DNA of 64,000 bases from Podarcis pityusensis (taxonomy: Eukaryota), in the NCBI GenBank assembly GCA_964106645.2, contig OZ067050.1. One strand, 5' to 3'. How positions within the stretch are numbered: position 1 is the stretch's first letter; every line of letters begins with the position of its first letter. The notes below the pieces were generated by a model. The model was not told the origin of the DNA. It searched no databases and saw only the letters and a program-made list of their open reading frames with translations. Below, piece by piece: positions 14,496 through 63,206 of this stretch. A program made the position numbers and the translations under genes.

Positions 14496-29107
<14,612 letters not shown>

Positions 29108-31966: not shown

Positions 31967-32165
31967 TATTTTTCTTTTCCTTTTTAAAAAAGGGCTGAGG
32001 TTTTATTTATATTTTTTAATACCGCTCCACCCACAACCCTCGATTACATCAAAAATAAAGCCCAGTACGACCGCCCTGATACAAATCGGTGATTTGACTC
32101 CTCCCTCTTTCTTCACAGTTTGGCTTCTACCTGACGCGCCCATTCTGATTCTGGATGCGGCTTTG

Positions 32166-32687
32166 ATGTGGCTCCATCGCAGTGGTCCACCCCCTGCTAC
32201 GTTGTCAACGCCGGCCCCCTCGACGGGAGCCCAGATGCCTCCTTCCTCTGTGGCCTCCCCGCTCAGTGAGTGTGGCAGCTGCCTGCTGATCATGACAGGC
32301 ATTGCCTTCATTGCCGGCCTTTTCATCGTGATCTCGGCCATCCTCTGCGACCGGGTCTTCCGTGGGTCCCTGCCCTCAGAAAGAAGGGGGCTGCCGTCTG
32401 TCTGGAGGCAAGGCGGGACGCTGTGGATCGAGCCTTCCAGGAGCCGCAGGGAGCCAGATCTCCTATCTAGGCCATCAGAAACGGTGCCCCTTTGGATCCA
32501 GCGCTCAAATGACTGGTTTCTGGAGCAAGGGAGCTGCGATTCCCCCGAAGATACCCAGATGGAGACGCAGAGCCCAAGCAGCTCGGCCCCTTTCTGGGAT
32601 GACGGCGAACCCACCTGGCGGATACAGCCACGCGTCACCCTGCAGGACCTACAGAGCTTTTTCCAGCACAGCGGTCGGGGTACCTAG
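32166..32687 (+). CDS. C16orf54: Transmembrane protein C16orf54 homologue, 173 aa (alternative ATG at 32235)
   Basis: Single coding exon. CGSCLLIM-TM-DRVFR...VWRQGGTLWIEP and C-terminal W.IQPRVTLQDLQSFF match recalled human C16orf54 (CGPCIPIM...VWRPGGELWIEP...LQPRVTLEQISAFW). Synteny with ZG16 and SPN. AATAAA at 33473. Confidence 0.92.
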   Translation: MWLHRSGPPPATLSTPAPSTGAQMPPSSVASPLSECGSCLLIMTGIAFIAGLFIVISAILCDRVFRGSLPSERRGLPSVWRQGGTLWIEPSRSRREPDLLSRPSETVPLWIQRSNDWFLEQGSCDSPEDTQMETQSPSSSAPFWDDGEPTWRIQPRVTLQDLQSFFQHSGRGT

Positions 32688-34360: not shown

Positions 34361-35240
34361 CTGTGCATTAGGTTCTCCTTAATCCTAGGAAATCAGTATG
34401 TGTTGAAAGGTTCTAGACTAGAGTCAGCCTAATTTCCTGGGGAGAATGAGCCATTTGCACATCAAAGGAGTGGGGCCTTGGCGGGTGTTAGAAAAGGCAG
34501 AGGCAATGAAAGCTTGGGAGGAGCATCGTGATGCAAGCTGACAGAAGTTGGGGGTCAGAAGGACATGACTTTTTGTCGCTGGGCTGCAAGGCTGCATCTG
34601 CGAGAAGAACAGAAACCTCTTGGAAAATGATGCTCTGAGCCGCCCCATCTGGACTCTGGTTGCGTAGATGTGTATATAAACCATGCACCATAAAGACACC
34701 ACAGTCTCTGCTGTGCCTCATTGTTCAAAAAGAAACACAGCGCTTACAACCCCTGGAATCTCTCACCACTTGGGGATAGAGTGTGTGTGTAACATTATTG
34801 TGATGGGACGATGAGCTGCTTGTGTGTAAAATCCTAGTCCCTCAGAGTTTGGTCAAGTTTGCAAACCTCTGTCTGTAACGGAGCCCCTTAAACATGGCTC
34901 CGTCAGTCGCTGGCAGATTCCGACAGTGGTTGCTTTCGGAATCGCTTCCAACATAAAAGCTCCTTAACGGAAACACGTCTTCTGGACTCTCTGCGTGACA
35001 GTTTCCGGCGAGGAGTGGGTGTCCCTACAGGAGGTCCTGAAACCTCCCCACTGTTTTCGCTGGAAGTGTCTCTGAGCCATCCCTCCAGCTCCCTTTCACT
35101 TCCCTTCCTTCCGATGGCAGTTCCCTGACATCCACCTCCCCTCCAGGGCCCCCTTCATCCCCTCTCGCCCCCTCCTCTACGGGCGGTGAGGAGGCAAAAC
35201 CCCGGAATGAACTTCCTTCATCTTCCGATGTCCCGAACAC

Positions 35241-36695
35241 TTATCTCCACCTGTTGCGGTTCCTGGTCTCGAAGTACTCCTCCTCCTCAGAGTCCATCTC
35301 CCCTTCCCCTTCCGATTCCGAGAATCCTTCCAACTCCTCCTCCTCATCGGTGGTCCCAAAGTATTCCCTCCGGAACCTCTCCACAGGCTGAGGTTTCCTT
35401 GGGAACCTTTGATGGAACGTTTCTATCAATACCTCGTCATTGATATCTTCTGCCATTACCCAAGTGTTTTCTGACTCCGGTTCTCCTTCCCACGCTACCA
35501 AATACTCCACCTGATCCCCCTTCCACCTGGCGTCGAGGATTTCTGCCACATGGCTGCTGCATTCCCTTTCTTCTATGACCGGTCCCCGAGTGGCCATCCC
35601 TTCTCGTCCCCCCTCATACGGTGACAGTAACGACCTGTGAAATACTGGGTGCAGTTTCATGTGGTTGGGTAACCGGAGCCTGAAAGCCACTGGGTTGACC
35701 TGTTGAATGACCTCAAAGGGACCCAATCTCCTGGGTCTTAATTTCTTACAACCTCCTTTGAACGGCAACCCTTGGGTTGACAGCCACACCCTATCTCCCA
35801 CCCTTATGGTTTCACCTTCCCTTCGGTTCTTGTCTGCCTGCCTCTTGTATTCTTCCTTCGCCCTTTCTAAGTTGAGTTGGAGCTGACGATGGATTGCTTC
35901 CATTTCTTCTACAAAATGCTCGGCTGCCAGGACACCCCATCTCTCCCCTTCTCCCCCTGGGAAAGCCCTGGGATGACACCCATAATTAGCCAAGAAGGGG
36001 CTCATCCCTGTGGACACATTCTCGGCATTGTTGTAGGCAAATTCCGCCAGCGCCAACTTTTCTACCCAGTCATTCTCTCTGTCATTGACATAACACCTCA
36101 GGTATTGCTGGAGGACCCCGTTTGCTCTTTCCGCCTGCCCGTTGGTTTCAGGGTGCCGGGCAGTCGAAAAGTTGACCTCCACCTGCAGTAAGCTCATGAG
36201 CTTCCTCCAGAACCTGGAAGTAAATTGTTTTCCTCGGTCTGAGACCACCCTCAATGGCACCCCGTGCAACCTAAAAATGTGTTCTACAAATAACTTCGCT
36301 GTCTCTTCCGCCGTGACTGCATGCGAGCAGGCTACAAAGTGGCACATCTTTGTTAGTAGGTCTACCACCACCATGATGGCTGTTTTCCCCTTGGACTTCG
36401 GCAGATCAGTCATAAAATCTATCGACACTGCCTCCCAAGGTCGTTCTGGGGTTGGTAAGGGTTCTAATAGCCCCGCCGGTGCCTGCCTCTCCCCTTTGGC
36501 TCGCTGGCATTGCTCACACCCTCTTACATACTCCCGTACATCTTCCCTCACCTTAGGCCACCAAAATTCCCTGGTGACCAACCACATGGTTTTGTGTTGT
36601 CCAAAATGCCCCGCCGTGGGGCTGTCGTGCAACTGCTTGAGTACCCTCCCCCTTAAGTCTCCTTCAGGGATATACAGTGCCCCTTTGTAATACAA
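35241..36695 (-). CDS. Gypsy integrase with chromodomain (pol remnant)
   Basis: HHCC zinc finger (HDSPTAGH...CEQC), DDE core (SIDF, SDRG, QAER), GPF module, chromodomain VAEILDARWKGDQVEYLVAWEGEPESENTW. No natural start of its own. Confidence 0.85.
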   Translation of the reverse strand: MYYKGALYIPEGDLRGRVLKQLHDSPTAGHFGQHKTMWLVTREFWWPKVREDVREYVRGCEQCQRAKGERQAPAGLLEPLPTPERPWEAVSIDFMTDLPKSKGKTAIMVVVDLLTKMCHFVACSHAVTAEETAKLFVEHIFRLHGVPLRVVSDRGKQFTSRFWRKLMSLLQVEVNFSTARHPETNGQAERANGVLQQYLRCYVNDRENDWVEKLALAEFAYNNAENVSTGMSPFLANYGCHPRAFPGGEGERWGVLAAEHFVEEMEAIHRQLQLNLERAKEEYKRQADKNRREGETIRVGDRVWLSTQGLPFKGGCKKLRPRRLGPFEVIQQVNPVAFRLRLPNHMKLHPVFHRSLLSPYEGGREGMATRGPVIEERECSSHVAEILDARWKGDQVEYLVAWEGEPESENTWVMAEDINDEVLIETFHQRFPRKPQPVERFRREYFGTTDEEEELEGFSESEGEGEMDSEEEEYFETRNRNRWR

Positions 36696-36784
36696 AGCTC
36701 CATTTCTTTCCTCGAAACCCCCTGGTTCCTCTCCCTCACCCCTAAGACCTCTGAGCTTATTCTGGGCGTATTCATCATTCTCTG

Positions 36785-37207
36785 TTTAATATCGCTGGAA
36801 AACATCAGATCCATGGCGCGAAAGAACTTCATCGTGTCCTTTAGGACGTCACTATTCGCTGCCATCAGGGGTCTAACCCAGTCTCTCGCCCCCTTTTCAA
36901 GATGCCCAATCACGAAAGCCACTCGTGATTCCTCGTCAGGGAATTCATCAAACTGCAGATTGAGGGCATATTGCATCTCTGTCCGAAAGCCATGATAGTC
37001 TTTGGGTTCCCCCCCAAACTTCTGCACCAATCCTGGTACCTTTCTGACGAGCTGGGTGTCTTTCCCCTTTTTGTCTGCATCCTGAGCCCTCCTCTCCTCA
37101 AGCCTCGCCGTCTGCAGCGCTAGCTGGACCTCCAACACCCGGTACCTTTCTTCCAGGCTTGGACCCGCTCCAGCTCCTGCTTCTCCGGTTCCGGCTGGGT
37201 TGCTCAT
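36785..37207 (-). CDS. Truncated Gypsy gag
   Basis: ATG 46 nt inside the 5' LTR; KFGGEPKDYHGF...FPDEESRVAFVIGHLEKGARDW resembles the Ty3/Gypsy capsid N-terminal domain; ends at the deletion junction. Confidence 0.8.
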
Positions 37208-40200
37208 GATGCCTTCTCCTGCACAAGCTGCTCACGGAGACTGTCGGAATGCTGTGATGGGACGATGAGCTGCTTGTGTGTAAAATCCTAGTCCCTCAGA
37301 GTTTGGTCAAGTTTGCAAACCTCTGTCTGTAACGGAGCCCCTTAAACATGGCTCCGTCAGTCGCTGGCAGATTCCGACAGTGGTTGCTTTCGGAATCGCT
37401 TCCAACATAAAAGCTCCTTAACGGAAACACGTCTTCTGGACTCTCTGCGTGACAGTTTCCGGCGAGGAGTGGGTGTCCCTACAGGAGGTCCTGAAACCTC
37501 CCCACTGTTTTCGCTGGAAGTGTCTCTGAGCCATCCCTCCAGCTCCCTTTCACTTCCCTTCCTTCCGATGGCAGTTCCCTGACAATTATGTCCAGCTTTT
37601 AATTTACCTTGAGGCCAGGAGTGCCAGCCTGGCCCCATGAGTGGCCAGGGCCGTGGGTGCCATGCAGCGTGCATGGCCCTGGCACTGAAGTTTGTGGGTG
37701 CCCAGCCCCTTCATGGGGAGTTTTGTGGGTGCTCAAGGCCCCAGGGAGTTGGCAGCTATGCGGGAGGCTTTTCATATGATGTTTTAGGACTTTTTAAATA
37801 TCGGAGCTGTATTTGATTTGGAAGTTTTATTTGTTGCACTGCTCAGACTTTTAAATACCACGGTTAAAAGAGACGATGGTTTTAACATGGTTCGCTGCTC
37901 TGAACTGTGCTTGTTCTCAAACAAATATGCCAGCAGATGCAAGTTCCAGTTAATACCTGTACTCATGACTGATAACCACACACACTTAGCATCTTTCTTT
38001 TTTCCTTCTGCTGTAACCTGTCAGGAAGATAGAAGTAGGTGTAAAGCATAGATGATGCTCACTCCAGTGAGGAAGGGAGCTGTTTCTGGCAGGGGAATTG
38101 AAAGTGACTAGTCTGTGGGGGAAGGCCCTTCACTCTACGCAGGCATTATGACTTTACCTCAGATGTGAAACTGACAAGGGCCTTCTGCACACTTGGCCTC
38201 CTGACTAGGGCCCAGTTAGATGCCTCCATCTTAGTTTTTGTTTTTTAAGTAAAGAAGCTGTGGGAAGCTGCCTGTTTGAACTGACTAATGGGAGGTTAGG
38301 GCTGCTTTGCATCTGGATTTTTCTGATCCAAAGCCATCCTTGAGTGAGTGGATTACAGGAGGGATTTAAAATAAATGATAATTGTGTGCTTCACAAATGA
38401 GGCAGTCCACATGGACTAAAATTATGTAGCTGCACCACTGCTCTCACCCCCTCTGACTCTCACTGGCAAAATGGGCCCACTGGCTCAAATCATGACGCCA
38501 GATCAGTGAGGATTGCCTTATGACCTGAAAATATGCCCCCTGGGGCACCTTGACTTCCACACGCACACCAACCCCCAACAGAGCAAGGGGTTGTATGTGA
38601 ATAAGAAGCACGTTCTGGCCACATTCACACTGAAAGCACTATGACGCCACTTTAAACAGTCATCATGGCTTCTTCCCCCGAAGCATCTTGGGAGCTGTAG
38701 TTTGTTCAGGATGCTGCTGAGAGTTGTTAGGAGAGCTCTGTTTCCCTCACAGGACTAAAATCCCTAGAGCGATTTAACAGATGATCCCTTTCACAGGGAA
38801 CTCTGGGGACTGTAACTGGGAGGGGAATGGGGGTCTCTTAACAACACTTAGCAGCCTTATCAAACTACAGCTCCCAGGATTCTCTGGGAGAAGCCATGAC
38901 AGTTTAAAGTGGTACCACAGAAATTTCAATGTCTCATGCGAATGTGGCCTCTATATGTTCTGGAAGCAGCCGCACCGAGCACTGGCCCTCAAGATATTTG
39001 GCTGGGCTAGAGGGCCTGGTCTTACCCTAGATTACCTGCATCTTTTCTCAACTATCTACTTCTTGCTTATATTAAGAAGCAGGCTTTTCAGATATAAACG
39101 CGCCATCACATCCTTCGAAACACACTAGATCCAGATTATCTCGCAAAACCTTTGCAGTTCCCATGCCCAGCCTTTCCTGTGGTTGGTCCTGTGGTGTCTT
39201 CTATGTTTATCTCAGCTCCTGCTGTACTCAAGCCATTCTCAGGTTGTCAAAGACCTCGCCTCCTCATGTTTCTTTTGTTTTTCTTGCCCCACAACATTTA
39301 AGGACAGGCTAACATGCCAACATTGAGCAGGAGAAAATCTTCCCTTCACACTTTCCCCATACCTGGATAAATTTCTGCTAAATCTCACCATTTTTTAGAC
39401 GGTTGCTAATGTCACAAGAAAACAGGGACAATCCCACCAATAATCCCTGCCCACACTGCTTACTCTTTCAAAGAAGTTTTTCAGAGTTTTTCAAGAAGTT
39501 TTAACTGGTTTAGATGCTTGGTTTTTAAAACTGATTTTAGAATAAGGAATTGCATTCTGTTATTGAATAAGTTTTGCATTTTAAAACTCATTTGAATCAC
39601 AGCACCAGTCACAAGTACAGGTAAAACGGGGTTTGGACCTGCTGCCCTCGATGCTAATACTATTTATTTAGGAACGTGCACCATTTTGTTCTAGAAAAAG
39701 ATACTACTACTACCTCGAATAATAATGTATGTGTCATATCAATTTTCTGGGCAACCAGTGGCTTTGGCGGGTGGGGGAAAATAGCTATTGAACAATGTAA
39801 GTTGCCAACATTTGGGGGGCCAGTGGGCATATTTGGAATTTTGAGAAAGTCTCCTTGGGCGCCAGACACACAATGGCTGCTGGGTTAGCATATCGCCAAA
39901 TGACTTTGGTGATGGGCCCATGAAATGCTCCTGCAACAGTCAGCCCATCAATGCAAGGAAAGGCACCTACACTAGCTACTGCCAGATTCACTCAGAGAGA
40001 AAAACTCTATGAAGGTTAGTCTAGTGCCATCATACACAACACACAACTGTTTATTGTTGTTTAGTCATGTCCGACTCTTCATGACCCCATGGACCAGAGC
40101 ATACAAAGATATTAGCCACAACCACAGTGATGGGGGCAGAGAGAGAGCAGGTGACAAAGATAAGGCCCAAGGCATTTTGCTGCCTGAAGCAGAGCCCAAG

Positions 40201-40309
40201 TACATGCAGCAACTATCTCAGACAGGGCCGGGGAGCCCATGCTTCTCCTTGAGTTGTTGGGCCGGGAGGCAGCTAGCTGTGGGACCACCCCTGAGAATGC
40301 CCTCTCCAT

Positions 40310-40646
40310 TGTTGTTGTTTAGTCATGTCCAACTCTTTGTGACCCCATGGACCAGAGCACGCCAGGCATTCCTGTCTTCTACTGCCTCCCACAGTTTGGT
40401 CAAACTCATGCTGGTAGCTTTGAGAACACTGTCCAACCATCTCGTCCTCTGTCGTCCCCTTCTCCTTGTGCCCTCCATCTTTCCCAACATCAGGGTCTTT
40501 TTCTCTTCTCATGAGGTGGCCAAAGTATTGGAGCCTCAGCTTCAGGATCTGTCCTTCCAGTGAGCACTCAGGGCTGATTTCCTTAAGAATGGAGAGGTTT
40601 GAAATTCTTGCAGTCTATGGGACTCTCAAGAGTCTCCTCCAGCACC
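40310..40646 (-). mobile_element. Bov-B LINE 3' fragment
   Basis: Same sequence as 24876-25230; 13-bp TSD ATGCCCTCTCCAT at 40297-40309 and 40647-40659. Confidence 0.88.
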
Positions 40647-43132
40647 ATGCCCTCTCCATAGCGGCTGCCGAATAACGGTGGCACCATTCTCTGGACTGGA
40701 TGTTAAGATGCTGGGAGGAGGACCTGGATAAAGCCCTCCCACCACCCGCAGTCCAGCGCCGATAAGGAGACAGGCAAGGGGAGATAAGCAGCCGAGGACG
40801 TCAACAAATGTTTGTCGCCTTGCAGATGTGCAGACGCTCAGAGAGGGACCTTGCTAGCCTAGTCTGGACGCAACTGCTCGACAAGACCATTGGCAGGTAT
40901 GGCGAAGAAGCCACCCCACTCGCCCCCAATGCACCCGCTTGGTCTCTGCCAGTGCTGCCCTTCCCTGATGGTTTTTGCTTTTCAAAAGGGTGGGGGCGGA
41001 AACAGGGTTGGGAATGGCGTTTTTCAGTGGGTAAGGCTTTGCTCTGTTCCGAGTCCCACCTTTTCGTCTCTTCTTTTTCTTTCCTGTGATAGAGGAAGGC
41101 AGGAATTTGAATTTTTAATTTGAATTTTTAGCTGTGTTTATGTGCGTGCATGCCCACAATTTGAACTCAGCTTCAAGCAGCAAAAAGTCTCAGGCCAGCA
41201 CTGCGTTCCCCGCAGGACAGCCTGTGGAGCCCTGGCAAGGGTCTTCTGCAATTTAGCAGCTGGGTGGCAGGTAGAAATTCAACAGGTGTAGTATGCTGCC
41301 TTCATGCCAGAGGAGGGGAGCTTGTACCCACTGCAACCATGAACACAGAAGCTCTGCCAGAAAGGATGTTTCAGCCACAGATAAATCTAATGGGGCTAAT
41401 AAAGTTATCCAGTCTTCCTCTCCCTGCTGCTCCCCAGCTGCCCTCATGCATTATGAAAGCTGAAATAGGCTCCTGTTTTCACCTGTGGGGGCCGGTCATT
41501 GCCTCTTAGCCTAACCTACCTAACAAGGATGTTGTGGGGATTAAATGACGAGGTGGGAAACCATGCACACCACATTGAGCTTGTAGAAAAGGTGGAATAT
41601 AGAATAATAATACTGATAATAGTACTAGGTCATAAAGAGATACATTCTGTTCTTTATGAAAAAAATTCATAACAAACCGAATTAATAGTAGAACAGAACT
41701 TTATCCTTTATGGCAGGATATAACTAATATATTAATATATAATATGAACAATAGGCCAAGGAGATAGACAGGTCACCGACAGTCAATGTTAGTTTTAGTT
41801 TGCAGCTATACATATACCAGCTATACATATACATTTACACATGCAAAATCCTCATAAATCTATGCCATCTTTTGTTTGCTTTCTGGGCCACGCAAATGAC
41901 AGATGCCCGGCTTTGCCTGGTGGCGGCGCCAGCCGTGAGTTGAAAATGGAGAGCTGACAGCTGTCTAGAAACGATAAGATTGCCACATGATGAGGAAGGC
42001 CTGTTGAAACATGGCAAGTCCAGCGTCTCAGCCGGATTCTGCACGCCTGGCCACATTCTAGGATTCACCACCTGCACCCTTTTAATATGTTGAGCTGTGG
42101 GTTGCGAATGCTAATTATATGTATTTAAAATATTTCACCCCTCTGGCACCTGGTGCAGCTGCTTCCCTGCATTTCCACAGACCAGGTTACAGCAGGGAAT
42201 CAAGCCCTCGGACCACCTTGATACCACCTAAATAGGGCCGTGTCCCCAAGCGCTGTAGAAATCCTCGGTCCAGATCCTCGGTCAGTTGCTGCGTGGGGCA
42301 AGTGATCTCTCTGGAAGCCAGTGGAGACAGGCATCGCCATCCTTGTTGATGCATGAAAGGGAAAGCTCATCTCCACCCAAACTCTGTCACATGGGCAGAG
42401 GCCATAACGAAACCCTTGCAACTGGAAAAACATGATGGTGGGGTTGAACTGTAGAGATGGAGAGGAATTCATTCATAACCAATTAGGTAGAAATTCAAAC
42501 GCATCAGATTTGCGTTTTCCAAACCAATGAACCAAACGCCAACTACCCTTTCAAACTAGCACTTCTCTGATTTAAAAGCCTATGAGTTGAGGTAGCTGCT
42601 GGCTGCCCTCTTTTCTCAATGCATGCTCTTGGATATTTCTTTTTCCCCATTTATTTATTTATTATTAATGTTGCCATACATATATGAAATCTTTACATAA
42701 TGATACATATACTTTATATTCATAAATTCACACTTTCACATTTCATTACGTACCAACATTTATCCATTTCTTATTTCTTGCCCTGTGTCTTCCCTCCACC
42801 CTGCGTGACTTCCTTGTTATTATTTTGTAACTTTATTATTGATTATAATTTTGTATCTTAATAATTAAACATTCAATCTTATATATCTGATTAGCTTAAC
42901 TTAACTTTGTGAAATCAGTCTATACATATCAATAAATTCTTGTTGGAGCATCTTTTGGTCATGTATTCTTCTACACATTTTCATTCCTGATTGAGATTTT
43001 GATTAGATTGCATTCTAATTGTTGCTGTCATTTTTGCTAATTCAACCCAATTAGCTCTTGGATATTTCTTTTACGTTTTGTCCTCAGGTTGCTGTTCCTT
43101 GTTGCTCCACTGCCTTCTGGAGTTCTGACACT

Positions 43133-44422
43133 ATGGAAACAAGATCTCTTCTCAGGCAAATAATGGGCTACAGCATGCCTTTTGGCTTCCTTATCCTTTT
43201 GGCCGTGGCCACAAATGGTGAGGAGAATGCAACCACACAACCTCCAGACAAATCTTTTTTTTTTTTTTTAAATAATTTTTATTAACAGGCCAATCACATC
43301 ACATTATCCATATCACATTAATTCCAAATTATACAGCCAAATTTTACATTTTGTTGGGGGTACCCATACATCAAGCTCCGCACGAGTCCAAAACAGCATC
43401 ACTTATCTTACTGCTTTAATTAGACAGTTCTGTCCAGTTTGATCCGGATAGTCCTTTATTACTTCCTTTCTCTTCTTGTTGTTATCATAAATTCCTTTCT
43501 TTGCGATCTCCGATGATTTTCACAAGCACGTTAAAAGCTCCACCCCCCCTTCATTCCAAACATACCGTCTCCTTGTGGTAATTCATCAGAAGATTTACTT
43601 ATCCGTCCGTCACTCCTGGTCGCAGAGATCCATTAATCAGCAGTCTTATCAGTCGAGCTTTACTTGATGTATGTGCTTTCAGCTTCATTTCCAATCGTAT
43701 GTTTCCAATTATAATTCCAAGCTGAAGCAACCAGCACGCGCTGATTGGAATCGGCGTCAGGAAGATCTGACTTCACCGGTGGCCTGTGCCAAGTGTTCGG
43801 CACCCCCATCTCTCGTTTCAGGGGGTGCATTGTGAACACCGCTGGCAGGACAGTGCCCCCCCACATCCTGAGGGGGATTAGGAAGGCTGCATACTTCCCA
43901 TAGCAGCCCCTTAGTACCTCGTATGGGTCAGAGAGATGTTATTGTCGGCCATCTTCCAATGCCCCACCTGGTGGCCCCCCAGACTAATCTTTGCCTCATC
44001 CCACTGTTGCAGCTAACAAATCGTCTTCTCAAAATGCAACCGCTTCGGAGACAATTCATACGTCCAGAGAAAGTAGAAAGAACAAAACCTCTGGAGAAAT
44101 GTATCCTGCTGCCTTGAAGCCTCTTTCCAAAGAATTGACTGCAGCTGCAAAATGGCCTCTGAATGCAACCATCAGCACCACTGAGATGTCACCCGGCAAA
44201 AAACCAAGCGCAAAACCAGGACAGGCTAAGGGAGAAGGAGAAATGAGGGCATCGCCTAAGTCAGATGAGAGGAATTCAACCCAAACCCATGGTAACAGGG
44301 GCTGTGGGGCTGGCTGCCGACCATCAACTACCACACCAGCTGCAAGAGCTGGATCTGGTGGTCTGACAGCAAACCTTGGAATCATCATGGCAGTGGTCCT
44401 CTCTCTCCTGCTCTGCTTCTGA
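43133..44422 (+). CDS. SPN/CD43-derived short mucin-like paralogue, predicted GPI-anchored, interrupted by a retroelement (possible intron 43218-44012)
   Basis: Acceptor, 5' UTR and signal peptide METRSLLRQIMGYSMPFGFLILLAVA nearly identical to SPN at 56735-56885. Frame resumes at 43991 with an S/T-rich, N-glycosylation-site-rich region and ends GSGGLTANLGIIMAVVLSLLLCF-stop. AATAAA at 44580. Could be a pseudogene if unspliced. Confidence 0.7.
43258..43978 (-). mobile_element. About 720-bp polyadenylated retroelement (L1-dependent, non-autonomous)
   Basis: Poly(T) run and minus-strand AATAAA at the left end; 14-bp TSD CCAGAC(A/T)AATCTTT at 43244-43257 and 43979-43992; minus-strand 5' end GGGG...AAGATGGCCG. 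Confidence 0.85.
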
Positions 44423-47400
44423 CCCTTGTCTGACCCCCTTGGTTGACGTGGGGCTTCCAAACCATGAAGTCCACTCACTCAGGGATGTGGTAGGATTGTA
44501 GTAATGCTGAAAATACACCCTGGGACATCTCCTCCGCTTCCAAACACCTAAGACCCAAATATAGTGTGTGTTTGTGTGAAATAAATTCTATGTTTTTTGA
44601 AAGAATCGCTCTGAGATCAGCCCTTTAAGCTCTCAGACTGTGTTACAGTGGTGAGACTGTACTACTCCTCTATTACCTTCCTCTCACCTCAAGAGTTTCG
44701 TATGTACACCAGCGCATCCTTGAAGACCTAGATTAACCCGTCTAACTTTGCAGTTTAACCACCCAGCCGTTCCTGTGTTGGTCTTGCCTTATCGACTCCT
44801 TTTGTTGTTCAACCGTTGCAGTTCATGGGCCCTTATCAGGCTGCCCCAGACAGGCATCCCTTCTATGACTTTCGTTTCTTCGTGCCCTGCGGCCTGAAAC
44901 AAAACACTGCCATGCCAGAACTGAGCAGGTGAAAAGCTTCCCTTTGTGCTTATCTCGGTGCCTGGAGAAGCCTTTTGCTCTGCCACCCCTGCTGAGGCCC
45001 CAAATGAGCCGGACATCTCATTTGGAATCAACCATGGGGAGGGGCATTTTTTTCGAGACTGCAACAGGGGAGAAAAGGCTTAAATTTGCCTTCCCAACAC
45101 ACCATGCTGACAGGGTCCGCCATGAGGCCCAAGTGGCGTAGCAGTTCATCGTAAGATTGTAGCGTTGGAAGGGACCCCGTGGGCCATGTAGTCTGACCCA
45201 CTGCGATGCATGCATCTCAACACATCGTCTCCCATCCAATTTGAAACCATACTGGGCCCTGCTTAGCTTTGCAAATGTGCTAGCAGTTTTCTTGCTGCAC
45301 CACTAGGAGTGGGGTGTTTGTTCAGGGGCTGGGCACACAAGGCCCTGGGTCCAATTCCTTGAATCTCCATGTTTTGGGCCACAATTCAGGGGTAGCTGAG
45401 CAGGGAGTCCTATGGGGGAGCATAGTGGTTTGTCTAGGGTTTCCACCAGGGGTGCTTCCAAGCCTGGAGATGCTGGGAATTGAACCGGCAAAGCAGAGTG
45501 TTTGCTCTGCCACTGAGCTATGGCCTTTCCATGGTTCAGCTCCCTCTTCCAGCTCAAATACATAATGGTGGCGCAGTGTTGAAGACCCTGGAGAGCCCAT
45601 ACTGCACAGAGGGTACAAGACTAGGCGAGGTGGGCCAGGGGTTCAGTGTGTGCTTATTTTAAAATAGCCTTGAATTCTACTTCTGAAAGTGAAGCATCTA
45701 TTTATATTGTCTTTATATTGTCTTCCCAAGAGTCGCTTGGGAAGAAACCAAGTCTTTAGTGTCATCAGCTCAGTCCTGGGAATACTCTGCCAACAGAGAT
45801 TCAACAGGCACCTTCTGTTTCAGTTTTTGAAAGCTTGCCAAAAACTTTTCTATTCAGTCAGGCTTATGCAGGCAATGAAGAATGCATCTTTTCAAAATAG
45901 TTGGCTGATTTCTGATATGTGTGTGATTATTTATATGATTGTTGAAAATGACTGATTTTTTTAAAATGAATAGTGGAATATATAGATAGTAAATACAAAT
46001 ATATAAATATTTTATGATCAATCAAATGAATAAATATTATTTGGGGAGTGTAGAGGATATTGGGGAAGGATTTTCCTGATCATTTGAGTTTGCTGTGTAA
46101 TCATGGGATTGCATTTACTGTTCAAAGGATTTTGACATGTTGTACTTCCTGGTTTCCTCAGCTGTACTATAAAATAAATAAATCAGTATTGTAGATGCTA
46201 TTTTTTTTAAAAAAAATTCTTTCTTACCTGCACCGATGATAGTCATTGTTTGGATGGGAGGCTTTTATCCATTTCCACAGTCACACAATCAATCAATCAA
46301 TCAATCAATCAATAGCTGAACTGGGATTCACACAGTCACAAAAACAAATTAACTGAAAAAGCCTCAAATAAAAAAAACGCAAAATAAATAGCAAAAACAA
46401 AAGCACCAAATATAAGCTCCAAATATCACCTTAGAACACTGCAGTCGGAAATGGAAGGCTTGAATTACAATTGGGGGGGACGCAAAGTAGCAGCGCAACA
46501 GGAAACACACAGGGGGACACAAAACGGAGCACATTTGGCTTCCAAAAAAAAGTTCGGAAACCAGAACACCTACTTCAGGTTTTGCAGTGTTTGGGTTCCA
46601 AGTTCTTCTTTAACTAAGCTGTTCGAAAACCAAGGTACCACTGTATTAGACAAACTAGAACCAGGCTGCAGACATGGGGCAGGCCAGAAAGGGACCCAGT
46701 CTAATTACAAACTTAATTCCACTTATCTGGGAGTAAACTCCCTAGAGTGCAATGCACTTTCCTTATTAGAAGACCAGGTTAGTCTGGTAGTCCTACATGC
46801 ACAACACACAAGATTTGCATACATCCGCCACAACACTGGTGAGTACAGAGACTGTGGAGGTAACAAAAACAAAAACAAAAACCAAGCAGTGGTTTTGCTG
46901 CTTGAAATGGGCTTGTAGCACTTGGGCCAACCATTTAAAACGGGGATGGGGATGCTGTGCTTCTCCCAGTGCTGTTGGACTCCAACTCCCATCAGCTAGT
47001 CTGATGCTCTAACCACTACACCACACTGACCCTCTCCATTGTGGTTGCCCAAAGATGGTGGAAGTGGAACCACCGAGATATTCTCAAGTCTGGATGTTCT
47101 AGAGGAAGACTTAGAGAAGTACCACACCCACACACATACCCCACCCAGTCCCACAGCAGTAAGGGGAAGATGTGCAAAAGGAGATAAGCGCTTGCCAGCT
47201 TCAGGGAGCCTGTGGTTGCCATACTGATATCTAGATGACTAAAAGGGGACGTTACAGCCCTAGTCTGAGCAGGATGAAAACCACCATCCACTTGCACGGC
47301 CAGTCTGCTTGCCTGGCAGCCCATCCATCTTACTTTCCTTGGCCGTTCTGTGGTTGTGCCTTCCTCCGCTGTGGGTGCAGGAAGCAGAGCTGAGCAGGGG

Positions 47401-50400
47401 CTGATCGTGCTTGCTTACTGGTGAGGCTAGTGCACTCTGCATGAGCTCTGAGGCATCCTTTCTTCACGTCGGCCGCCCTAGCATTTTGTGTGGGAGGGTG
47501 GATAACTTTGGTGGTCCTTGGTTCCAAGAGCCTCTCGGTCTCCCCACATGTCCCAACGTGGGCAGGCCCCTCTCACACCCGCGATGCATTGCCAAGCTGA
47601 CTACACCACTTCCTCTCGCTGTGTGCATTTAACGGTTGCTTCTTCTTTTTCAGTATTTCTCCACCGCCACCTCCTCCTCGGTTTCATTCACTCCTTCCTG
47701 CCCGGCCAAACAGAATATTGGTGAGGCGAAGGCAAAGCTGAGGCCTGCCCCACAAGAACCTTCCCTCAACAGGTGGGACCAGCGTTGCGTGAAGCCTTCT
47801 TCCTAAGCAAAAGGTAGAGGGGAGCGGGATGGTGGGGCATTGGTCATTTGGGATAGAGCAAAATTGCAAAGTATCGTGTGGAAATGGTTGTGGGGAAGGT
47901 GGGGTGGCAGCTGCGGAAATGAGAGGTGCATTGTTAAAGTGCGTTTGTTGTATCGTCCACCTGGCATCCCTCGAAGGAGTTCTGTTGGGCATCTATTTTA
48001 TCTTCACAGAAACCTGTGAGGTAGGTTAGCGACTAGCCGAGGCGGGATTTGAACCTGGCTCTAAATCAAACACTTTGTCTGCTAAGTAGTCTGCCCCAAG
48101 CTGGGATTAAGAGCTGAAAGAGCTGGAAGAACAGTGGAAAAGAGGCTGCTATATGCAGAAAATCCAGCATCTCGACCAAGTGGCAAAATAGAGAAATCTG
48201 CTTCAGGCAGGACCATGATAGAGAGATGGGGAAAGGCAGGAATTTGAATTTTTGAAGTGCCGGCCCTAACAGAAGGGAGGTGGTACTTCTGGGGCTCAGT
48301 TTCAGGCGGCAAAATAACTTGAGTTGGCACAGGAGTCTCCACAGGACTAAATCAGGTTTCTGGTCCTGATTTCATCCTTATAATCTAGGCAGCTATATAG
48401 TTTTATAGTCTCCAGCCACATTTTCCTTCCTGGATGCTGGAAGCATTTCTTAAACTCTTCGCTGCTCATGAATAACACATGCCGAAACGTGGAAAGTCAA
48501 TGAGCACCCTTTTTCTATAGTGATAAGTCACAGATTCCATGCTGCATGGATGAGTGAAAGTGCTGTACAGCCCTCAAGTTTCCCCTACACCCACCTTCGA
48601 TTACGATATCTCACAGTAGATTCAGAAGAGATGCAGTGGAGGAGACACAACGTGCACACGCTTGGCATCTCCTGTCTGAGCTTCCTACGCAGGAACTGAC
48701 AGAGGATGGTCCATTGTGGTGAGATGTGGGGAATCCCCCTCCCAAAAACTGCAGGGAAAGCACTCAGAGGACGAATTTCTTTCAGGGCAGCCTCTTATAG
48801 CACTTCTCTGGCCCCTCAAGGGATGGGATGAGGTAGAAATTCAGATTTTTTTGCATTCTAATGAGAAACTTCCTAATCCACGCTTCTCAAGCCAATGCAC
48901 AATTAATTATCCTTTGGAATTTGCACCTCTCCAGATTTTGCAGTGTAGATCTCCAAACCGAGAGGGTGTGCAAAAATGCATATGTTAGTGCTTCTCCAAT
49001 TTTCCACCTCCCACATGAATTGTTGAAGGTCTTGATGATTTTTTCCCCTGCCTGCTGTAGCAATTGCAATGCGCCGTGCTAGACACTGCATGATTTTGAA
49101 ATGCATTTTTGTTGCTGCTTTTATTTGTTATACTGTATTTGATTGCACTTTAAATTCCATAGAATTTGATACGACTTCAGAGTGCAAGTGTCCTTTGCAG
49201 AGATGGCACAGAACACCTGAATGAAGCTTATGGGCCACTGGTAATCCGCAAACACAATATGGGAACCCTGTGTTAGGCACAAAAATGCATACGTTAGGAA
49301 AGATAATGTAGAAAAATCCATTGCTTTATAGGAAATCGCTTACACAAAAAAATGTGCCCAATAGTCAAAACTGCATACCTTTAAAAAATATGGGGGGTTT
49401 TTGGAGAGAATTTTGCACTCAAAAAACTGAGGAATTTTCATGAGGATTTTTTAAAAAACAGATTGCAATTTGCTGTGGAAATGCAAAGATGTTAGTTTAA
49501 GACTGGGAAACTGAGGAACTGAGAGAAACTGAAATGGGCAGATATATTCATCCTTTATCCTCAGGGTGGAGGATAAGCTGCTCCAAGGAATATTATACCA
49601 GGATCTTCCCCTGACTTGGAGCCTGCCCTGTAGAGAGACAACATGAAATGGGTGTCCAAATGGCACTGCAATATTTTTTTAGAGGGTTGGGCCTAGCAGG
49701 GATGAGGCAATGCTTCGGGCAGAGAACTGCCGTGGGCTGGAACAACCCTGATCATTCAGCTTTCTTTCTTTCTTTCTTACTTATATTTTGTTGCTTCTAT
49801 TTCTTTTAATTATGGCAGTATGAGAGAAACACTAGAAAGAGAAGCAGCAGGCTGTGGCAGGAAGAGGGAGCGGCCCTTTCCATCTACCCGCCTTACACAA
49901 CTGCCACCCGGCCCCTCCTCTCCCCAGGTTCTCTCAGCGGTCAGCCATTTTGTGGGGCGCACACAGTGAGGCCCCTTCCATTGGCCTCCTTTGACCCATT
50001 TTTGTTTTACGTTCCTTCCATGAGACACATTGTGGTTTCCTGCTGAAAGGCAGGATAGAAATATAATAAACGTACACAACAGAACAGTGTTGCAGCACAC
50101 AAGCAGCATTTCCACACAATTATCTCATTAAGAGAATGTCTCAACGTCAGACTAGGATACCTAAAGGGCCGTCTCCTTTTGCCTGGCAGCTTGTTAAGAT
50201 GAAGGAAACGTTCGAGGGTGGAGGGTGGCAATATATCAGGAGCCTCTGAGTTTACAGTAATTCTCTAATGGCCATAATTACTGTGGTGCCAAGGTGGTTG
50301 GCAGGGATATTTGGACTGGGCACATGAGGGAAATTATTCAGCTGCAAGTGGCAGCAGGTAGGGCCTTGGGCAGTGCCAGTTTAAGGTTTCACAGGAGGCT

Positions 50401-56804: not shown

Positions 56805-57977
56805 ATGGAAACGCGATCCCTTCTCAGGCAAATAATTGGCTACGGCATGCCCTTTGGCGTCCTTATTCTTTTGACCGTGGCTGCACATGTTGATGGGCAA
56901 GTTTCTGCTACTTCAGACACACGGCCTGTGGGGACCACCATCTTTCCCCCCACGTCAACTTTCACAACTGAAAGGGTGGACACAGAGCTTGCAACCTCAC
57001 CCTCTCCAGCCAAGCCTTCAGCTCTCCCCTTGTCTCAGTCCACTGCTGCAGCTAAAAAACTGTCTCTAAAAACAGCCACTACAGAGATTATTCTCCAAGA
57101 GAGCAGTACAGATGAAGATGAAACTATCACCAACAATACATCAGGCCCCCATCCCTCTACCGGCCCTGCGATCAGCCTTACCACAGAAACAGCTGCTGTG
57201 GGACAAAAATTTGCGATCAGACCTACCACAGAAGCAGCTGTTGTGGGACAAAAAACTGGTACAACCAGTGGCGTGGCAAACCCTCTCAATACAACAACAG
57301 CCCCTCTCGAGACTACTGTTGGGAGTACATCTGGCATCAAACCAAGGTCAAATTCAAAACAGACTACCAAGGGTGAAGCACAGCCAAGTCCGAAGCCAGA
57401 ACAAGATGTGGTAGATGACACCAAAACAATGGACAACCGCACCCATTGGCCTGCTCAGTGGCCCTCAACCACGACAGCTGTCCCCCAAACAACAAGCGCT
57501 GTCCTTGGCCCAAGAGCAAGTTCTGAGAACAACAGCCAGACTGGAATAATTGTGGCCGCTGTCCTCTGTGCCCTTCTGTTCCTGATCCTCTTGATTGCCA
57601 TCCTCCTTTGCTGGCGAAGGCGCCGCTCTGGCTCAACCAGCTTCAACGAGGGGTGGGCAGGCCAGGTGGCGCTGCCAGACGACTCGGCCTTGGATCGGGA
57701 TGTGGAGCAAGGGGCAGTGCCTGCAAAGGAAGAGGAGACCAAGCGCAACACACTCATCACGTTCTCCGGCAAGCGTCAGTCAAGGGTGCCTTCGGTAGCC
57801 ATGGAGGAAATAGGCGAGAAAGGAGAGAGCGGGGAGAACCAGAAACTGCTTTGTGGAGATGCTGGCGGAGGCTCCAGCCCAGAGGCTTCTGGGAAAGCAA
57901 ATGGTAGACTCTCAGAATCCACCATGCAGTCCTCTCAAGAGATCGTGTTCCCCCCACCCCCAGCTAACCAGGAGTAG
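56805..57977 (+). CDS. SPN: Leukosialin (sialophorin, CD43), 390 aa
   Basis: Single coding exon after acceptor 56733-56734, Kozak GCCGCCATGG, signal peptide, S/T/P mucin ectodomain, TM, tail WRRRRSG...WAGQVALP...RNTLITFSGKRQSR..SVAMEE matching recalled CD43 (WAGPAQVP...RPTLTTFFGRRKSR..SLAMEE). Synteny with C16orf54 and ZG16. Confidence 0.92.
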   Translation: METRSLLRQIIGYGMPFGVLILLTVAAHVDGQVSATSDTRPVGTTIFPPTSTFTTERVDTELATSPSPAKPSALPLSQSTAAAKKLSLKTATTEIILQESSTDEDETITNNTSGPHPSTGPAISLTTETAAVGQKFAIRPTTEAAVVGQKTGTTSGVANPLNTTTAPLETTVGSTSGIKPRSNSKQTTKGEAQPSPKPEQDVVDDTKTMDNRTHWPAQWPSTTTAVPQTTSAVLGPRASSENNSQTGIIVAAVLCALLFLILLIAILLCWRRRRSGSTSFNEGWAGQVALPDDSALDRDVEQGAVPAKEEETKRNTLITFSGKRQSRVPSVAMEEIGEKGESGENQKLLCGDAGGGSSPEASGKANGRLSESTMQSSQEIVFPPPPANQE

Positions 57978-61499: not shown

Positions 61500-63206
61500 T
61501 CACACCCCCACTTCACGCCCTCTGTTGTCGTCATCCTTCTCCTCCGACTCCTCAGAGCACACTTCTTCGTGGCTTTCCTCTTCCTTCTCCCCGCACATTC
61601 TCTGGCAGCTCTCGTTCCAGCACATCCGCAGGTGGAAGTAGCCGGCGCAGGTGATGATGAAAAGGATGGAGGTGAAAACCAGCCCCCACAGCGCCACCCG
61701 CTTCTCAGCCCTGCCATTTATGGTGCACTCAATTCTCTGCTGGCACCTGGTAGTCGACGGGGTGCATACCCAATACGCACTCCAGAGCCTGGGCATCTGG
61801 AAGATGAAAATGACACAGAGGAAAGAGATCTCCAAGGCAAGGATAAGTCCCACCCAGATATCAAAGAGGGGGACACCACAGATGTTAGTGATCCTGGGCC
61901 TCTTCTTCCGCCTAGAAGAAGATTCTCTGTGTCGGTCATGGTGGTGGGCAGCTTCACACGGCGGGGTCGCGTGACATGGCTCAGCCTCGGTGCATGTGCA
62001 GGCCGTGTCTCCATGGTAACACAGCATCGGTCCGGCAGCCATGCCTGGTCCGGACATGACCTGTGCCTGGCCAACGGGTTTGCAGTGGGAGTCTCCAGCC
62101 ATCCATGGCTGGTTGCACACATTGCCTCCAAAGTTCCCATCACTCCCGCCTGTGGTGTCAAAGGTTACGTGGCGCTGGCCGTGCACCTTACACCCCTGAG
62201 CTGGCCTGCGTTTGATGGCCATGTTTGCTTTGTCATCTACCCAGGGATGGGCAGGGACATAGCCCATGCTGCCTTCGGTGTCTGACTTGCATTTGGTGGC
62301 CGTGCGGTATTTGCCATCATCATGGATACCTTGGCCGATGTATCTTTTAGGTGTGCCCATAGCATACCCATCATTAGCTAAACCACCCGATTCTTGAGGG
62401 TTGGCGTATCTCCAATGGAGGGGTTCTCTGTGCTCGTCACCTGACCAAGACTGAGGGGACATTTTGCCTTTGTAAGGTGAGCCGCTAAGGGAGGCCGAGG
62501 TGCTCTTGGTGGCCACGTGGCACTGCTCCTTTTCGCCACAATAGGATGCCGCAGTGGTTTGCCTCATGTGACCTTGATGTGCGGCCATCTTGGTTTGCCT
62601 AGTGTCCGTTGGACCGTAGCTCACACTGGGGCCATACCCTTCAGCCATGGGAGCCGCATGCCCCCCATGCCAATCATCCCAGTGGGTATAGTAAGGATGG
62701 TGGGCATGGTGGCGATGGTGGGCATGGTCGTGGCCATAGTGCCTAGGGAGACCACGGCGCCCAACATTGTAGATGGTGGATATGTCGGGGACGCCACTGT
62801 GGGATGCTGTGGCAACAATGGCCAAGCCTTCCCCTTTATCCCTATCCTCTTTCTCTCTCCTCTTCTTCTTCTTCTTCTCCTTGGGGGTGGTGAGCCGCAG
62901 GAGCCCTACGAGAAGGATCAACGCGATGAATACCAGCCCCCATGTTGCTGCGATGGAGACGGGAAAATGTTGGTTGTAGCACAGGGCTGTGCAGAAGTCT
63001 CGCGACAGGTCGCCTTCGCCCTCGGTGATACTGCAGCTGGTGTCGTCTTTGATCTTGTCCCAGGGGCCGTTGGCGAAGAAGATGGCCATGATGCGGAGGC
63101 CCAGCAGGAAGTACCATGGGTTCAAGCCCTCGCAGTCGAGTGCACCGGAGAGGGAGGATAGCAATGGTCGAAAGAGATGGATAAGACCTGAGAGGATGAT
63201 GGACAT
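61500..63206 (-). CDS. Highly divergent connexin-like four-TM protein, 568 aa
   Basis: Intact single-exon ORF with a splice acceptor directly before the ATG. TM1 LGLRIMAIFF-W, EL1 C-x13-C-x3-CYNQHFPVS, TM2, loop of roughly 330 aa, TM3 LEISFL, EL2 C-x6-C-x5-C...RAEK, TM4, short acidic tail. Confidence 0.8.
   Translation of the reverse strand: MSIILSGLIHLFRPLLSSLSGALDCEGLNPWYFLLGLRIMAIFFANGPWDKIKDDTSCSITEGEGDLSRDFCTALCYNQHFPVSIAATWGLVFIALILLVGLLRLTTPKEKKKKKRREKEDRDKGEGLAIVATASHSGVPDISTIYNVGRRGLPRHYGHDHAHHRHHAHHPYYTHWDDWHGGHAAPMAEGYGPSVSYGPTDTRQTKMAAHQGHMRQTTAASYCGEKEQCHVATKSTSASLSGSPYKGKMSPQSWSGDEHREPLHWRYANPQESGGLANDGYAMGTPKRYIGQGIHDDGKYRTATKCKSDTEGSMGYVPAHPWVDDKANMAIKRRPAQGCKVHGQRHVTFDTTGGSDGNFGGNVCNQPWMAGDSHCKPVGQAQVMSGPGMAAGPMLCYHGDTACTCTEAEPCHATPPCEAAHHHDRHRESSSRRKKRPRITNICGVPLFDIWVGLILALEISFLCVIFIFQMPRLWSAYWVCTPSTTRCQQRIECTINGRAEKRVALWGLVFTSILFIITCAGYFHLRMCWNESCQRMCGEKEEESHEEVCSEESEEKDDDNRGREVGV

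What the first reader, a model, noticed from the sequence alone, without database searches (positions are those of the whole stretch)
43218..44012. Possible new intron that removes a retroelement from the CD43 paralogue in frame
Seen: donor AATG|GTGAGG at 43218, 40 nt before the insertion (SPN has GTTGAT at the equivalent place), and acceptor ctttgcctcatcccactgttgcAG| at 44011-44012. Both are phase 1, giving ...VATN-A-NKSS... and an intact 164-aa product (85+410 nt). The single mismatch between the two TSD copies (CAAAT versus CTAAT at 43984-43988) produces a consensus branch point 25 nt before the acceptor with no intervening AG. Inference: intronisation rescuing a TE-disrupted, originally single-exon CDS.
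Basis: partly seen in the sequence, partly recalled or inferred. Interest (0 to 1): 0.8.

Follow-up and report, generated by a model that had tools for sequence, protein, structure and literature searches.

The report
Possible retrocopy-born intron, lizard CD43 duplicate
In a Balearic wall lizard (Podarcis), a short tandem copy of the CD43 gene was split by a 723-base retrocopy that related species lack; strong in-phase splice signals bracket the insert and could remove it as a new intron, but I found no RNA evidence that this happens.

Summary
The window is Podarcis DNA, about 98.9% identical to P. lilfordi. A truncated tandem duplicate of SPN/CD43 (ATG 43133, stop 44420-44422) is interrupted by an antisense, poly(A)-tailed retrocopy (43256-43978) with a 12-nt target-site duplication.

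- **Polarity:** P. raffonei has the precise empty site and an intact single-exon 183-aa ORF. P. lilfordi shares the insertion. P. muralis probably lacks it, judged by length only.
- **Derived signals:** two signals occur only in the insertion-bearing lineage. The donor +5 G is new (GTGAGG here, GTGATG in P. raffonei, GTTGAT in SPN). The A-to-T change makes CTAAT in the 3' duplicate, the only well-placed branch site for AG 44011-44012.
- **Frame:** donor and acceptor are both phase 1, which gives 28+1+135 = 164 aa.

Splicing itself is untested. The RNA-informed P. lilfordi annotation has no protein from this locus. The acceptor is only moderate, and a stronger decoy acceptor lies inside the insert. 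dN/dS is uninformative.

My odds are about 0.5 for a disrupted, non-productive duplicate and about 0.4 for a working in-frame intron.

The parts
40826..40897 (+). Upstream exon used by one annotated P. lilfordi SPN isoform (473 aa), with donor CAG|GTATGG at 40898. It may be the duplicate's own first exon.
   Evidence: tblastn of the P0034 N-terminus on the window. Donor yardstick 4.67. Weak collinear similarity of 40.1-40.9 kb to 46.8-47.3 kb.
43086..43087 (+). Conserved 5'UTR acceptor AG of the duplicate (...ttttgtcctcAG|GTTGCTG), the same as the SPN exon-2 acceptor.
   Evidence: Alignment with SPN. Identical in P. raffonei. Yardstick 8.27, top 0.5% of AGs.
43088..43217 (+). Proposed exon 1': 45 nt of 5'UTR plus 85 nt of coding sequence (ATG 43133; signal peptide METRS...LLAVATN).
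   Evidence: One difference from P. raffonei in 130 nt and none from P. lilfordi. About 88% identical to SPN outside one gap.
43218..43223 (+). Candidate 5' splice site GTGAGG (exon-end G at 43217, +5 G at 43222). P. raffonei has GTGATG and SPN has GTTGAT.
   Evidence: Yardstick 5.21 (top 0.43%) against 1.14 for the P. raffonei version.
43218..43255 (+). 38 nt of former coding sequence (G-E-E-N-A-T-T-Q-P-P-D-K-S) that would become intronic. It carries 4 clustered differences from P. raffonei.
43244..43255 (.). 5' copy of the target-site duplication, CCAGACAAATCT. It is identical to the P. raffonei empty site.
43256..43978 (-). Retrocopy of 723 nt, antisense to the gene. It has a poly(A) tail (14 T on the plus strand, 43256-43269) and AATAAA on the minus strand at 43278-43283. 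It has no protein, tRNA or Rfam match and no second copy in about 210 kb of lacertid DNA.
   Evidence: Absent from P. raffonei and present in P. lilfordi at 99% identity.
43820..43821 (+). Competing acceptor AG inside the insert (...ctctcgtttcAG|GGG). If used with donor 43218, the frame stops after 3 further codons.
   Evidence: Yardstick 6.23. Translation. No well-placed yTnAy branch site without an intervening AG.
43979..43990 (.). 3' copy of the target-site duplication, CCAGACTAATCT. The derived T at 43985 makes CTAAT (43984-43988, branch A at 43987).
43991..44012 (+). Former coding sequence (L-P-H-P-T-V-A) serving as the pyrimidine tract and candidate 3' splice site (AG 44011-44012).
   Evidence: Identical in P. 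raffonei. SPN also has CTGCAG|CT here. Yardstick 2.97, top 5%.
44013..44422 (+). Proposed exon 2' coding part: a mucin-like Ser/Thr/N-glycan-rich stretch followed by a 13-residue hydrophobic C-terminus. The stop at 44420-44422 falls inside what is the transmembrane segment in SPN.
   Evidence: The ORF is open in only 0.3% of dinucleotide shuffles.
44580..44585 (+). AATAAA polyadenylation signal of the duplicate, conserved in P. raffonei.
56805..57977 (+). The full-length SPN/CD43 (leukosialin) gene, 390 aa, and the source of the duplicate.
   Evidence: 98% identical to P. lilfordi leukosialin; orthologues named leukosialin across squamates.

Best explanation
A short, truncated tandem duplicate of SPN/CD43 was a real single-exon coding gene in ancestral Podarcis. 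It encodes a signal peptide, a mucin-like stretch and a short hydrophobic tail, with no cytoplasmic domain. In the lineage leading to P. lilfordi and the window's species, a polyadenylated RNA was reverse-transcribed into its coding exon, in antisense orientation, with a 12-nt target duplication. Read straight through, the gene now ends after 50 residues.

The insert is bracketed by a strong GT donor 38 nt upstream, and by a branch site, pyrimidine tract and AG 22 nt downstream. All of these are made of former coding sequence and target-duplication sequence, and they are in the same phase.

My most likely reading is that these signals are real potential, but the locus is currently a disrupted, non-productive duplicate: a young unitary pseudogene, or merely an exon-like piece inside an SPN intron. 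The insertion would have fixed by drift because the duplicate was dispensable.

Shown: the insertion, its polarity, the derived state of the two signals, and the frame arithmetic. Inferred: the present functional state.
For: - Empty site and intact 183-aa ORF in P. raffonei.
- Insertion shared with P. lilfordi.
- The read-through frame stops at 43283-43285.
- No protein containing exon 2 among 5.8 billion clusters or 1.84 billion representatives.
- The P. lilfordi annotation used RNA-seq and Iso-Seq from heart, kidney, liver, lung and tail with PASA, TransDecoder and EVM (PMC10214862). It has nothing between C16orf54 (CAI5790950) and SPN (CAI5790951-3).
- Even the intact P. raffonei copy has no called gene.
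- One annotated P. lilfordi SPN isoform splices from 40826-40897 over the whole duplicate to 47653. Transcripts that cross the locus can therefore skip it.
- The acceptor is only in the top 5% of AGs, and a higher-scoring acceptor sits inside the insert.
- Since the split from P. lilfordi, both substitutions in exon 2 are non-synonymous.
- dN/dS against P. raffonei is 1.3-1.6.
Against: - The donor is as good as or better than the donors inferred for the locus. It is the only strong GT in the upstream CDS and is in phase with the acceptor.
- The two changes that matter most for splicing, donor +5 T-to-G and the A-to-T that makes CTAAT, are both confined to the insertion-bearing lineage.
- CTAAT is the only well-placed yTnAy branch site for any of the competing acceptors.
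- Exon 2 is still open in both insertion-bearing species, and the one indel since their split is 3 nt, so in frame.
- dN/dS cannot discriminate, because bona fide SPN gives 0.8-1.15.
- Annotation pipelines often drop short, family-less ORFs, and the tissues sampled were not lymphoid.
Confidence: 0.5

Rival explanations
1. One reading: the retrocopy is removed as a new 795-nt, phase-1 GT-AG intron (43218-44012).

- Exon definition would pair the strong conserved acceptor at 43087 with donor 43218, giving a 130-nt exon that carries the 5'UTR and the whole signal peptide.
- U2 would use the CTAAT created in the 3' target duplicate.
- The first AG downstream (44011-44012) would be the acceptor.
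- The product is a 164-aa secreted or lipid-anchored mucin that lacks 21 residues of the ancestral protein and gains one Ala.

The insertion supplied the intron length. Without it, GT and AG are only about 60 nt apart, which I take from general knowledge to be too short for efficient vertebrate splicing.
For: - Frame arithmetic and exon-wise translations.
- Donor in the top 0.43% of GTs, against the top 6% for the P. raffonei version.
- Exon-end G and +5 G are the most conserved donor positions outside GU (abstract of 10.1101/2021.03.07.434243).
- Derived CTAAT 24 nt from the AG with no AG in between, while the decoy acceptor lacks such a site.
- All signals are identical in P. lilfordi, with 0 differences over 43000-43254.
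- The ancestral ORF was clearly maintained by selection: it is open in 0.3% of shuffles and intact in P. raffonei.
- There is evidence of a transcription start upstream of the duplicate in P. lilfordi.
Against:
- No protein model exists in the RNA-informed P. lilfordi annotation.
- The acceptor is moderate and a stronger decoy exists.
- The four clustered changes around the donor read like coding changes: D-D-H-A-P became E-E-N-A-T, which creates an N-A-T sequon. The strong donor may therefore predate the insertion by accident rather than be compensatory.
- There is no statistical power to see constraint since the insertion.
Confidence: 0.4
2. The donor is used but non-productively. It would splice to the acceptor inside the insert (43820-43821), to the AG after the poly-U tract (43287-43288), or onward to SPN exons (47653 or 56735). 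The result is truncated or out-of-frame messages, so the strong donor matters for RNA processing of the SPN transcription unit but not for rescue.
For: - The decoy acceptor scores 6.23 against 2.97 for the candidate.
- Use of 43822 gives a stop after 3 codons.
- An annotated isoform shows that the duplicate lies inside an SPN intron.
- Antisense poly(A) tracts followed by AG are the usual 3' splice sites of exonised SINEs (PMC2394776).
Against: - The decoy has no well-placed branch site without an intervening AG.
- The poly-T acceptor scores only 1.38 and would make a 71-nt intron.
- No such isoform is among the P. lilfordi SPN proteins.
Confidence: 0.1

Closest known systems
TE-insertion-driven intron gain ('intronization' by Alu insertion into last exons, Sela et al. 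2007, PMC2394776; the SINE-born intron in the rice catalase A coding region cited there)
   Same: A retroposed element lands in an exon and a new GT-AG intron containing it is activated. The ancestral, insertion-free state is seen in related species.
   Different: The four human cases are all in 3'UTRs and are alternative (intron retention). That paper states that SINE-born introns had not been reported in vertebrates and expects them to be rare in CDS. Here the site is in a vertebrate CDS. Both splice sites come from host coding sequence, the branch site comes from the target duplication, and the inserted RNA is not a recognisable SINE. Use of the intron is unproven.
Intronization of exonic sequence (Irimia et al. 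2008; Catania and Lynch 2008; three human cases in PMC12124190)
   Same: Former coding sequence (38 + 22 nt) would become intronic, and the length removed from the ancestral CDS is a multiple of 3 (63 nt replaced by one codon).
   Different: Classical intronization needs no insertion. Here 92% of the intron would be foreign DNA.
Introners (transposon-derived introns; Gozashti et al. 2022, as cited in PMC12124190)
   Same: A mobile-element insertion with a target duplication contributes to the splice signals.
   Different: As I recall them, Introners are high-copy, mostly DNA-type elements that carry or create their own splice sites, in algae, fungi and some invertebrates. This is a single low-copy retrocopy in a vertebrate.
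SPN / CD43 / leukosialin
   Same: It is a tandem duplicate next to SPN in the conserved C16orf54-SPN neighbourhood. It shares the 5'UTR acceptor, the signal peptide, the membrane-proximal ectodomain (32% identity over 90 aa, E 2e-5) and the start of the transmembrane segment.
   Different: It has no cytoplasmic tail. The stop falls inside the transmembrane segment, leaving a 13-residue hydrophobic end after a small-residue stretch (AGSGG). That looks like a GPI-attachment signal, which is my inference and is untested. It has no Pfam or sequence relatives.

Membership tests
Spliceosomal U2-type GT-AG intron | GT at the 5' end within a consensus context (exon-end G, +3 R, +4 A, +5 G) | tested here: met
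   ATG|GTGAGG at 43218. Yardstick score in the top 0.43% of GTs in the window and at least equal to four inferred donors nearby.
Spliceosomal U2-type GT-AG intron | Branch site yUnAy 18-40 nt upstream of the first AG, followed by a pyrimidine tract and then AG | tested here: met
   GACTAAT with A at 43987, 24 nt from AG 44011, with no AG in between. 16 of the 22 bases before the AG are pyrimidines. The acceptor rank is only in the top 5%.
Spliceosomal U2-type GT-AG intron | Actually removed from RNA (junction reads, cDNA) | not testable with these tools
No protein model from the locus is in either library.
TE-insertion-driven intron gain | The insertion is derived, with an uninterrupted exon at the orthologous site in an outgroup | tested here: met
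   P. raffonei L003 has the exact empty site and a continuous 183-aa ORF. The unfetched gap in P. muralis is 742 nt shorter than the window interval, matching the 735-nt insert plus duplication.
TE-insertion-driven intron gain | The reading frame is preserved after removal | tested here: met
   85 + 410 nt = 165 codons. The exon-wise translations have no stop.
LINE-mediated (target-primed) retroposition | 3' poly(A), an upstream AATAAA, flanking direct target-site duplication, and a precise empty site | tested here: met
   14-nt A tail. AATAAA 8 nt before the tail on the minus strand. A 12-nt duplication with 1 mismatch.
LINE-mediated (target-primed) retroposition | Identifiable source (SINE/LINE family or parent gene) | tested here: not met
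   No other copy in the window or in 7 lacertid loci. No tRNA, Rfam or Pfam match. No vertebrate genome-wide search is available here.
SPN/CD43 (leukosialin) | Descent from SPN (paralogy) | tested here: met
   Shared acceptor, 5'UTR and signal peptide. Ectodomain and transmembrane similarity. Tandem position, with C16orf54 synteny.
SPN/CD43 (leukosialin) | Complete transmembrane segment and conserved cytoplasmic tail | tested here: not met
   The stop lies inside the transmembrane-homologous segment, and similarity to SPN fades within about 100 nt past the stop, leaving nothing that matches the cytoplasmic tail. The same stop is present in P. raffonei.

The most novel reading that the evidence does not exclude
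A retrocopy insertion into the coding exon of a vertebrate gene was converted into a working phase-1 intron. It would use a host-derived donor sharpened by a +5 T-to-G change and a branch point created by a point mutation in the target-site duplication. Both the ancestral, uninterrupted allele and the intron-bearing allele would still be observable in living sister lineages of one genus.
Probability: 0.3. Interest if true: 0.75.

Novelty: new member of a known kind. Interest (0 to 1): 0.5.

Why it matters
New introns are very rare in vertebrates. The reported TE-born ones sit in 3'UTRs (PMC2394776), and CDS intronization cases are few (PMC12124190).

If the junction is real, this locus would show an intron birth in a coding region with every step datable:
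- the empty site in P. raffonei;
- the filled site in the Balearic lineage;
- two single-base changes that built the signals.

Each step could also be tested in a minigene.

If the junction is absent, the locus is an ordinary young pseudogene. It would then be a useful caution that good-looking, in-phase splice signals around an insertion can arise without function.

Tried and rejected
- **Protein searches with exon 2 (by reference):** the word search found nothing at 79-250 aa, the exhaustive search of 1.84 billion representatives found nothing, and Pfam found nothing.
- **The joined 164-aa model:** The exons were handled separately by reference.
- **Orthologous DNA from the SPN side:**
  - P. 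muralis (L001) and Zootoca (L002) stop about 2.2 kb short of the duplicate.
  - The P. lilfordi and L. agilis SPN products were not on record.
- **Orthologous DNA from the C16orf54 side:**
  - P. muralis (L005) ends about 200 nt before the ATG.
  - Zootoca (L006) and L. agilis (L007) do not reach the duplicate.
  - Only P. raffonei and P. lilfordi reach it.
- **The window's own SPN product** is not on record, so the window's assembly and species could not be named.
- **Identity of the insert:** Rfam gave only a sub-threshold SCARNA7 hit. There were no tRNAs, no Pfam hit on its ORFs and no other copies.
- **dN/dS** as a test of function was rejected as uninformative, because SPN itself evolves at 0.8-1.15.
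- **A bacterial promoter/terminator scan** was irrelevant.
- **The search of earlier findings** returned nothing. One call failed on a word format.

Full report
**What is there**

The window is lacertid lizard DNA. The 390-aa ORF at 56805-57977 is 98% identical to leukosialin (SPN/CD43) of Podarcis lilfordi and 86-90% identical to that of P. muralis. Its orthologues are named leukosialin across squamates. A C16orf54 homologue lies at 32094-32687, so the SPN neighbourhood known from mammals is kept.

Over 12.7 kb the window is 98.5-98.9% identical to the P. lilfordi assembly, but differs from it by a 2.8-kb LTR element. The window therefore comes from a very close relative of that assembly. The window's own SPN product is not on record, so I cannot name the species.

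**The duplicate**

About 13.7 kb upstream of SPN, on the same strand, lies a truncated copy.
- It shares the 5'UTR acceptor (...tgtYctcAG|GTTGCTG), the 5'UTR and the signal peptide with SPN.
- It then diverges strongly. The ectodomain is 32% identical over 90 aa at E 2e-5.
- It stops inside the segment that is the transmembrane helix in SPN. Nothing corresponds to the cytoplasmic tail.
- It has no Pfam family and no relative in either protein library.
- The ORF is not a compositional accident. Only 0.3% of dinucleotide shuffles of 43991-44419 stay open.
- The short hydrophobic end after AGSGG looks like a GPI signal. That is my inference only.

**The insertion**

The stretch 43256-43978 is a 723-nt sequence in antisense orientation.
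- It has a 14-nt poly(A) tail, read as T on the plus strand, and an AATAAA 8 nt before the tail on the minus strand.
- It is flanked by CCAGACAAATCT (43244-43255) and CCAGACTAATCT (43979-43990).
- It has no second copy in the window or in seven lacertid loci, about 210 kb in all.
- It has no tRNA, Rfam or Pfam match.
- It is therefore a low-copy retrocopy of unknown source, not a recognisable SINE.
- Read straight through, the gene ends at 43283-43285 after 50 residues.

**Comparative test**

I reached the orthologous site by walking from C16orf54.

| Species | State of the site |
|---|---|
| P. raffonei (L003) | Exact empty site (...CCTCCAGACAAATCTTTGCCTCAT...) and an uninterrupted 183-aa ORF with the same start and the same stop |
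| P. lilfordi (L004) | Insertion present at 99% identity |
| P. muralis | Not fetched; the gap between two fetched loci is 2,965 nt against 3,707 nt in the window, a 742-nt deficit that matches the 735-nt insert plus duplication, so the insertion is probably absent |
| Zootoca and Lacerta | Loci do not reach the site |

- **Polarity:** the insertion is derived and arose before the split of P. lilfordi from the window's species.
- **Branch site:** the empty site reads CAAAT, so CTAAT is a derived A-to-T change in the 3' duplicate.
- **Donor:** it reads GTGATG in P. raffonei, GTTGAT in SPN and GTGAGG here and in P. lilfordi. The +5 G is therefore derived in the insertion-bearing lineage.
- **Acceptor:** TTGCAG|CT is ancestral coding sequence. 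It is identical in P. raffonei, and SPN has CTGCAG|CT.
- **Verdict on the criterion:** the condition 'same signals already in insertion-free alleles' is not met.

**Quality of the signals**

| Site | Score | Rank |
|---|---|---|
| Donor 43218 | 5.21 | top 0.43% of 3,254 GTs |
| P. raffonei version of the donor | 1.14 | top 6% |
| Four inferred donors in the locus | 0.96-4.67 | |
| Acceptor 44011 | 2.97 | top 5% of AGs |
| Three inferred acceptors in the locus | 6.1-8.8 | |
| Acceptor inside the insert (43820) | 6.23 | |

- No other GT in the upstream CDS scores above 2.
- Joining the donor to the 43820 acceptor gives a stop after three codons.
- Only the 44011 acceptor has a well-placed yTnAy branch site: GACTAAT, with the A 24 nt from the AG and no AG in between. 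The 43820 acceptor has none.
- The frame works: 85 + 410 nt, 28 + 1 + 135 = 164 aa.

**Evidence on use**

- None is direct.
- The P. lilfordi annotation was built from RNA-seq and Iso-Seq of five tissues with PASA, TransDecoder and EVM. Its protein accessions run from C16orf54 (CAI5790950) directly to three SPN isoforms (CAI5790951-3). No protein with exon 2 exists anywhere.
- Even the intact P. raffonei gene has no called gene. The duplicate is therefore either weakly expressed or generally missed by annotation.
- One P. lilfordi SPN isoform (473 aa) begins in an exon equal to window 40826-40897, upstream of the duplicate, and splices to 47653. Transcription therefore starts upstream of the duplicate and can skip it.
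- Weak collinear similarity between 40.1-40.9 kb and 46.8-47.3 kb suggests that this exon is the duplicate's own first exon.

**Constraint**

- dN/dS for window against P. raffonei is 1.3-1.6. SPN itself gives 0.8-1.15, so the measure cannot discriminate.
- Since the split from P. lilfordi, exon 2 has two substitutions, both non-synonymous and one in each lineage. The window also has one 3-nt TCT gain.
- Expected neutral change over that time is too small to test.
- The four clustered changes next to the donor turned D-D-H-A-P into E-E-N-A-T, which creates an N-A-T sequon. They look like protein-level evolution. The +5 G may therefore have arisen while this stretch was still coding, before the insertion, and not as compensation.

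**Verdict**

The functional claim is open.

| Reading | Odds |
|---|---|
| Disrupted, non-productive duplicate | 0.5 |
| Real use of the 43218-44012 intron | 0.4 |
| Other uses of the donor | 0.1 |

The closest known cases are TE-driven intronization (Alu in human 3'UTRs, and the SINE-born intron in rice catalase A; PMC2394776) and exon intronization (PMC12124190). A confirmed case would be a new member of that kind. It would be notable for lying in a vertebrate CDS, and for a branch point made by a mutation in the target duplication.

Noticed in passing
window 34799-37584: An LTR retrotransposon with two 332-nt LTRs that are 100% identical (34799-35130 and 37253-37584, TG...CA ends, apparent ATTAT target duplication). 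It carries only a gag-like ORF (36653-37207, minus) and an integrase/chromodomain ORF (35241-36695, minus). It is absent from P. lilfordi, P. raffonei and P. muralis, so it is a very young, internally deleted insertion specific to the window's lineage.
   Followed up: partly
window 40826-40897 and 47653-47814: Mapping the P. lilfordi SPN isoforms (473 and 454 aa) places alternative 5' exons both upstream and downstream of the duplicate. The duplicate therefore sits inside an annotated SPN intron and may behave as an alternative terminal exon of the SPN transcription unit.
   Followed up: partly
window 32094-32687 (+): C16orf54 homologue (PF15755/DUF4689), 98% identical to P. raffonei. It shows that the C16orf54-SPN neighbourhood is conserved with mammals.
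   Followed up: partly
window 61500-63206 (-): A 568-aa single-exon ORF with His-rich and Cys-rich stretches. Its orthologues in P. muralis and Zootoca (569 and 573 aa) carry only a faint or weak connexin (PF00029) hit.
   Followed up: no
window 44056-44478 (-) and L003 20030-20452 (-): A 140-aa antisense ORF overlaps exon 2 of the duplicate and is also open in P. raffonei. It is probably a by-product of the sense-strand codon content.
   Followed up: no
window 44024-44026: A TCT (Ser) gain specific to the window's lineage. P. lilfordi and P. raffonei both have one TCT fewer. It is in frame.
   Followed up: yes
window 43218-43234 vs L003 19930-19946: Four substitutions within 15 nt separate the window from P. 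raffonei, against about 5% divergence elsewhere. The run AATGCAACC that results also occurs at 44034-44042 in exon 2. This could be a multi-nucleotide event or a micro-conversion.
   Followed up: no
window 40309-40648, 24873-25329 and others: Copies of a SINE-like repeat, whose translation contains ...[13 protein letters not shown]..., recur in the window and in all lacertid loci fetched.
   Followed up: no
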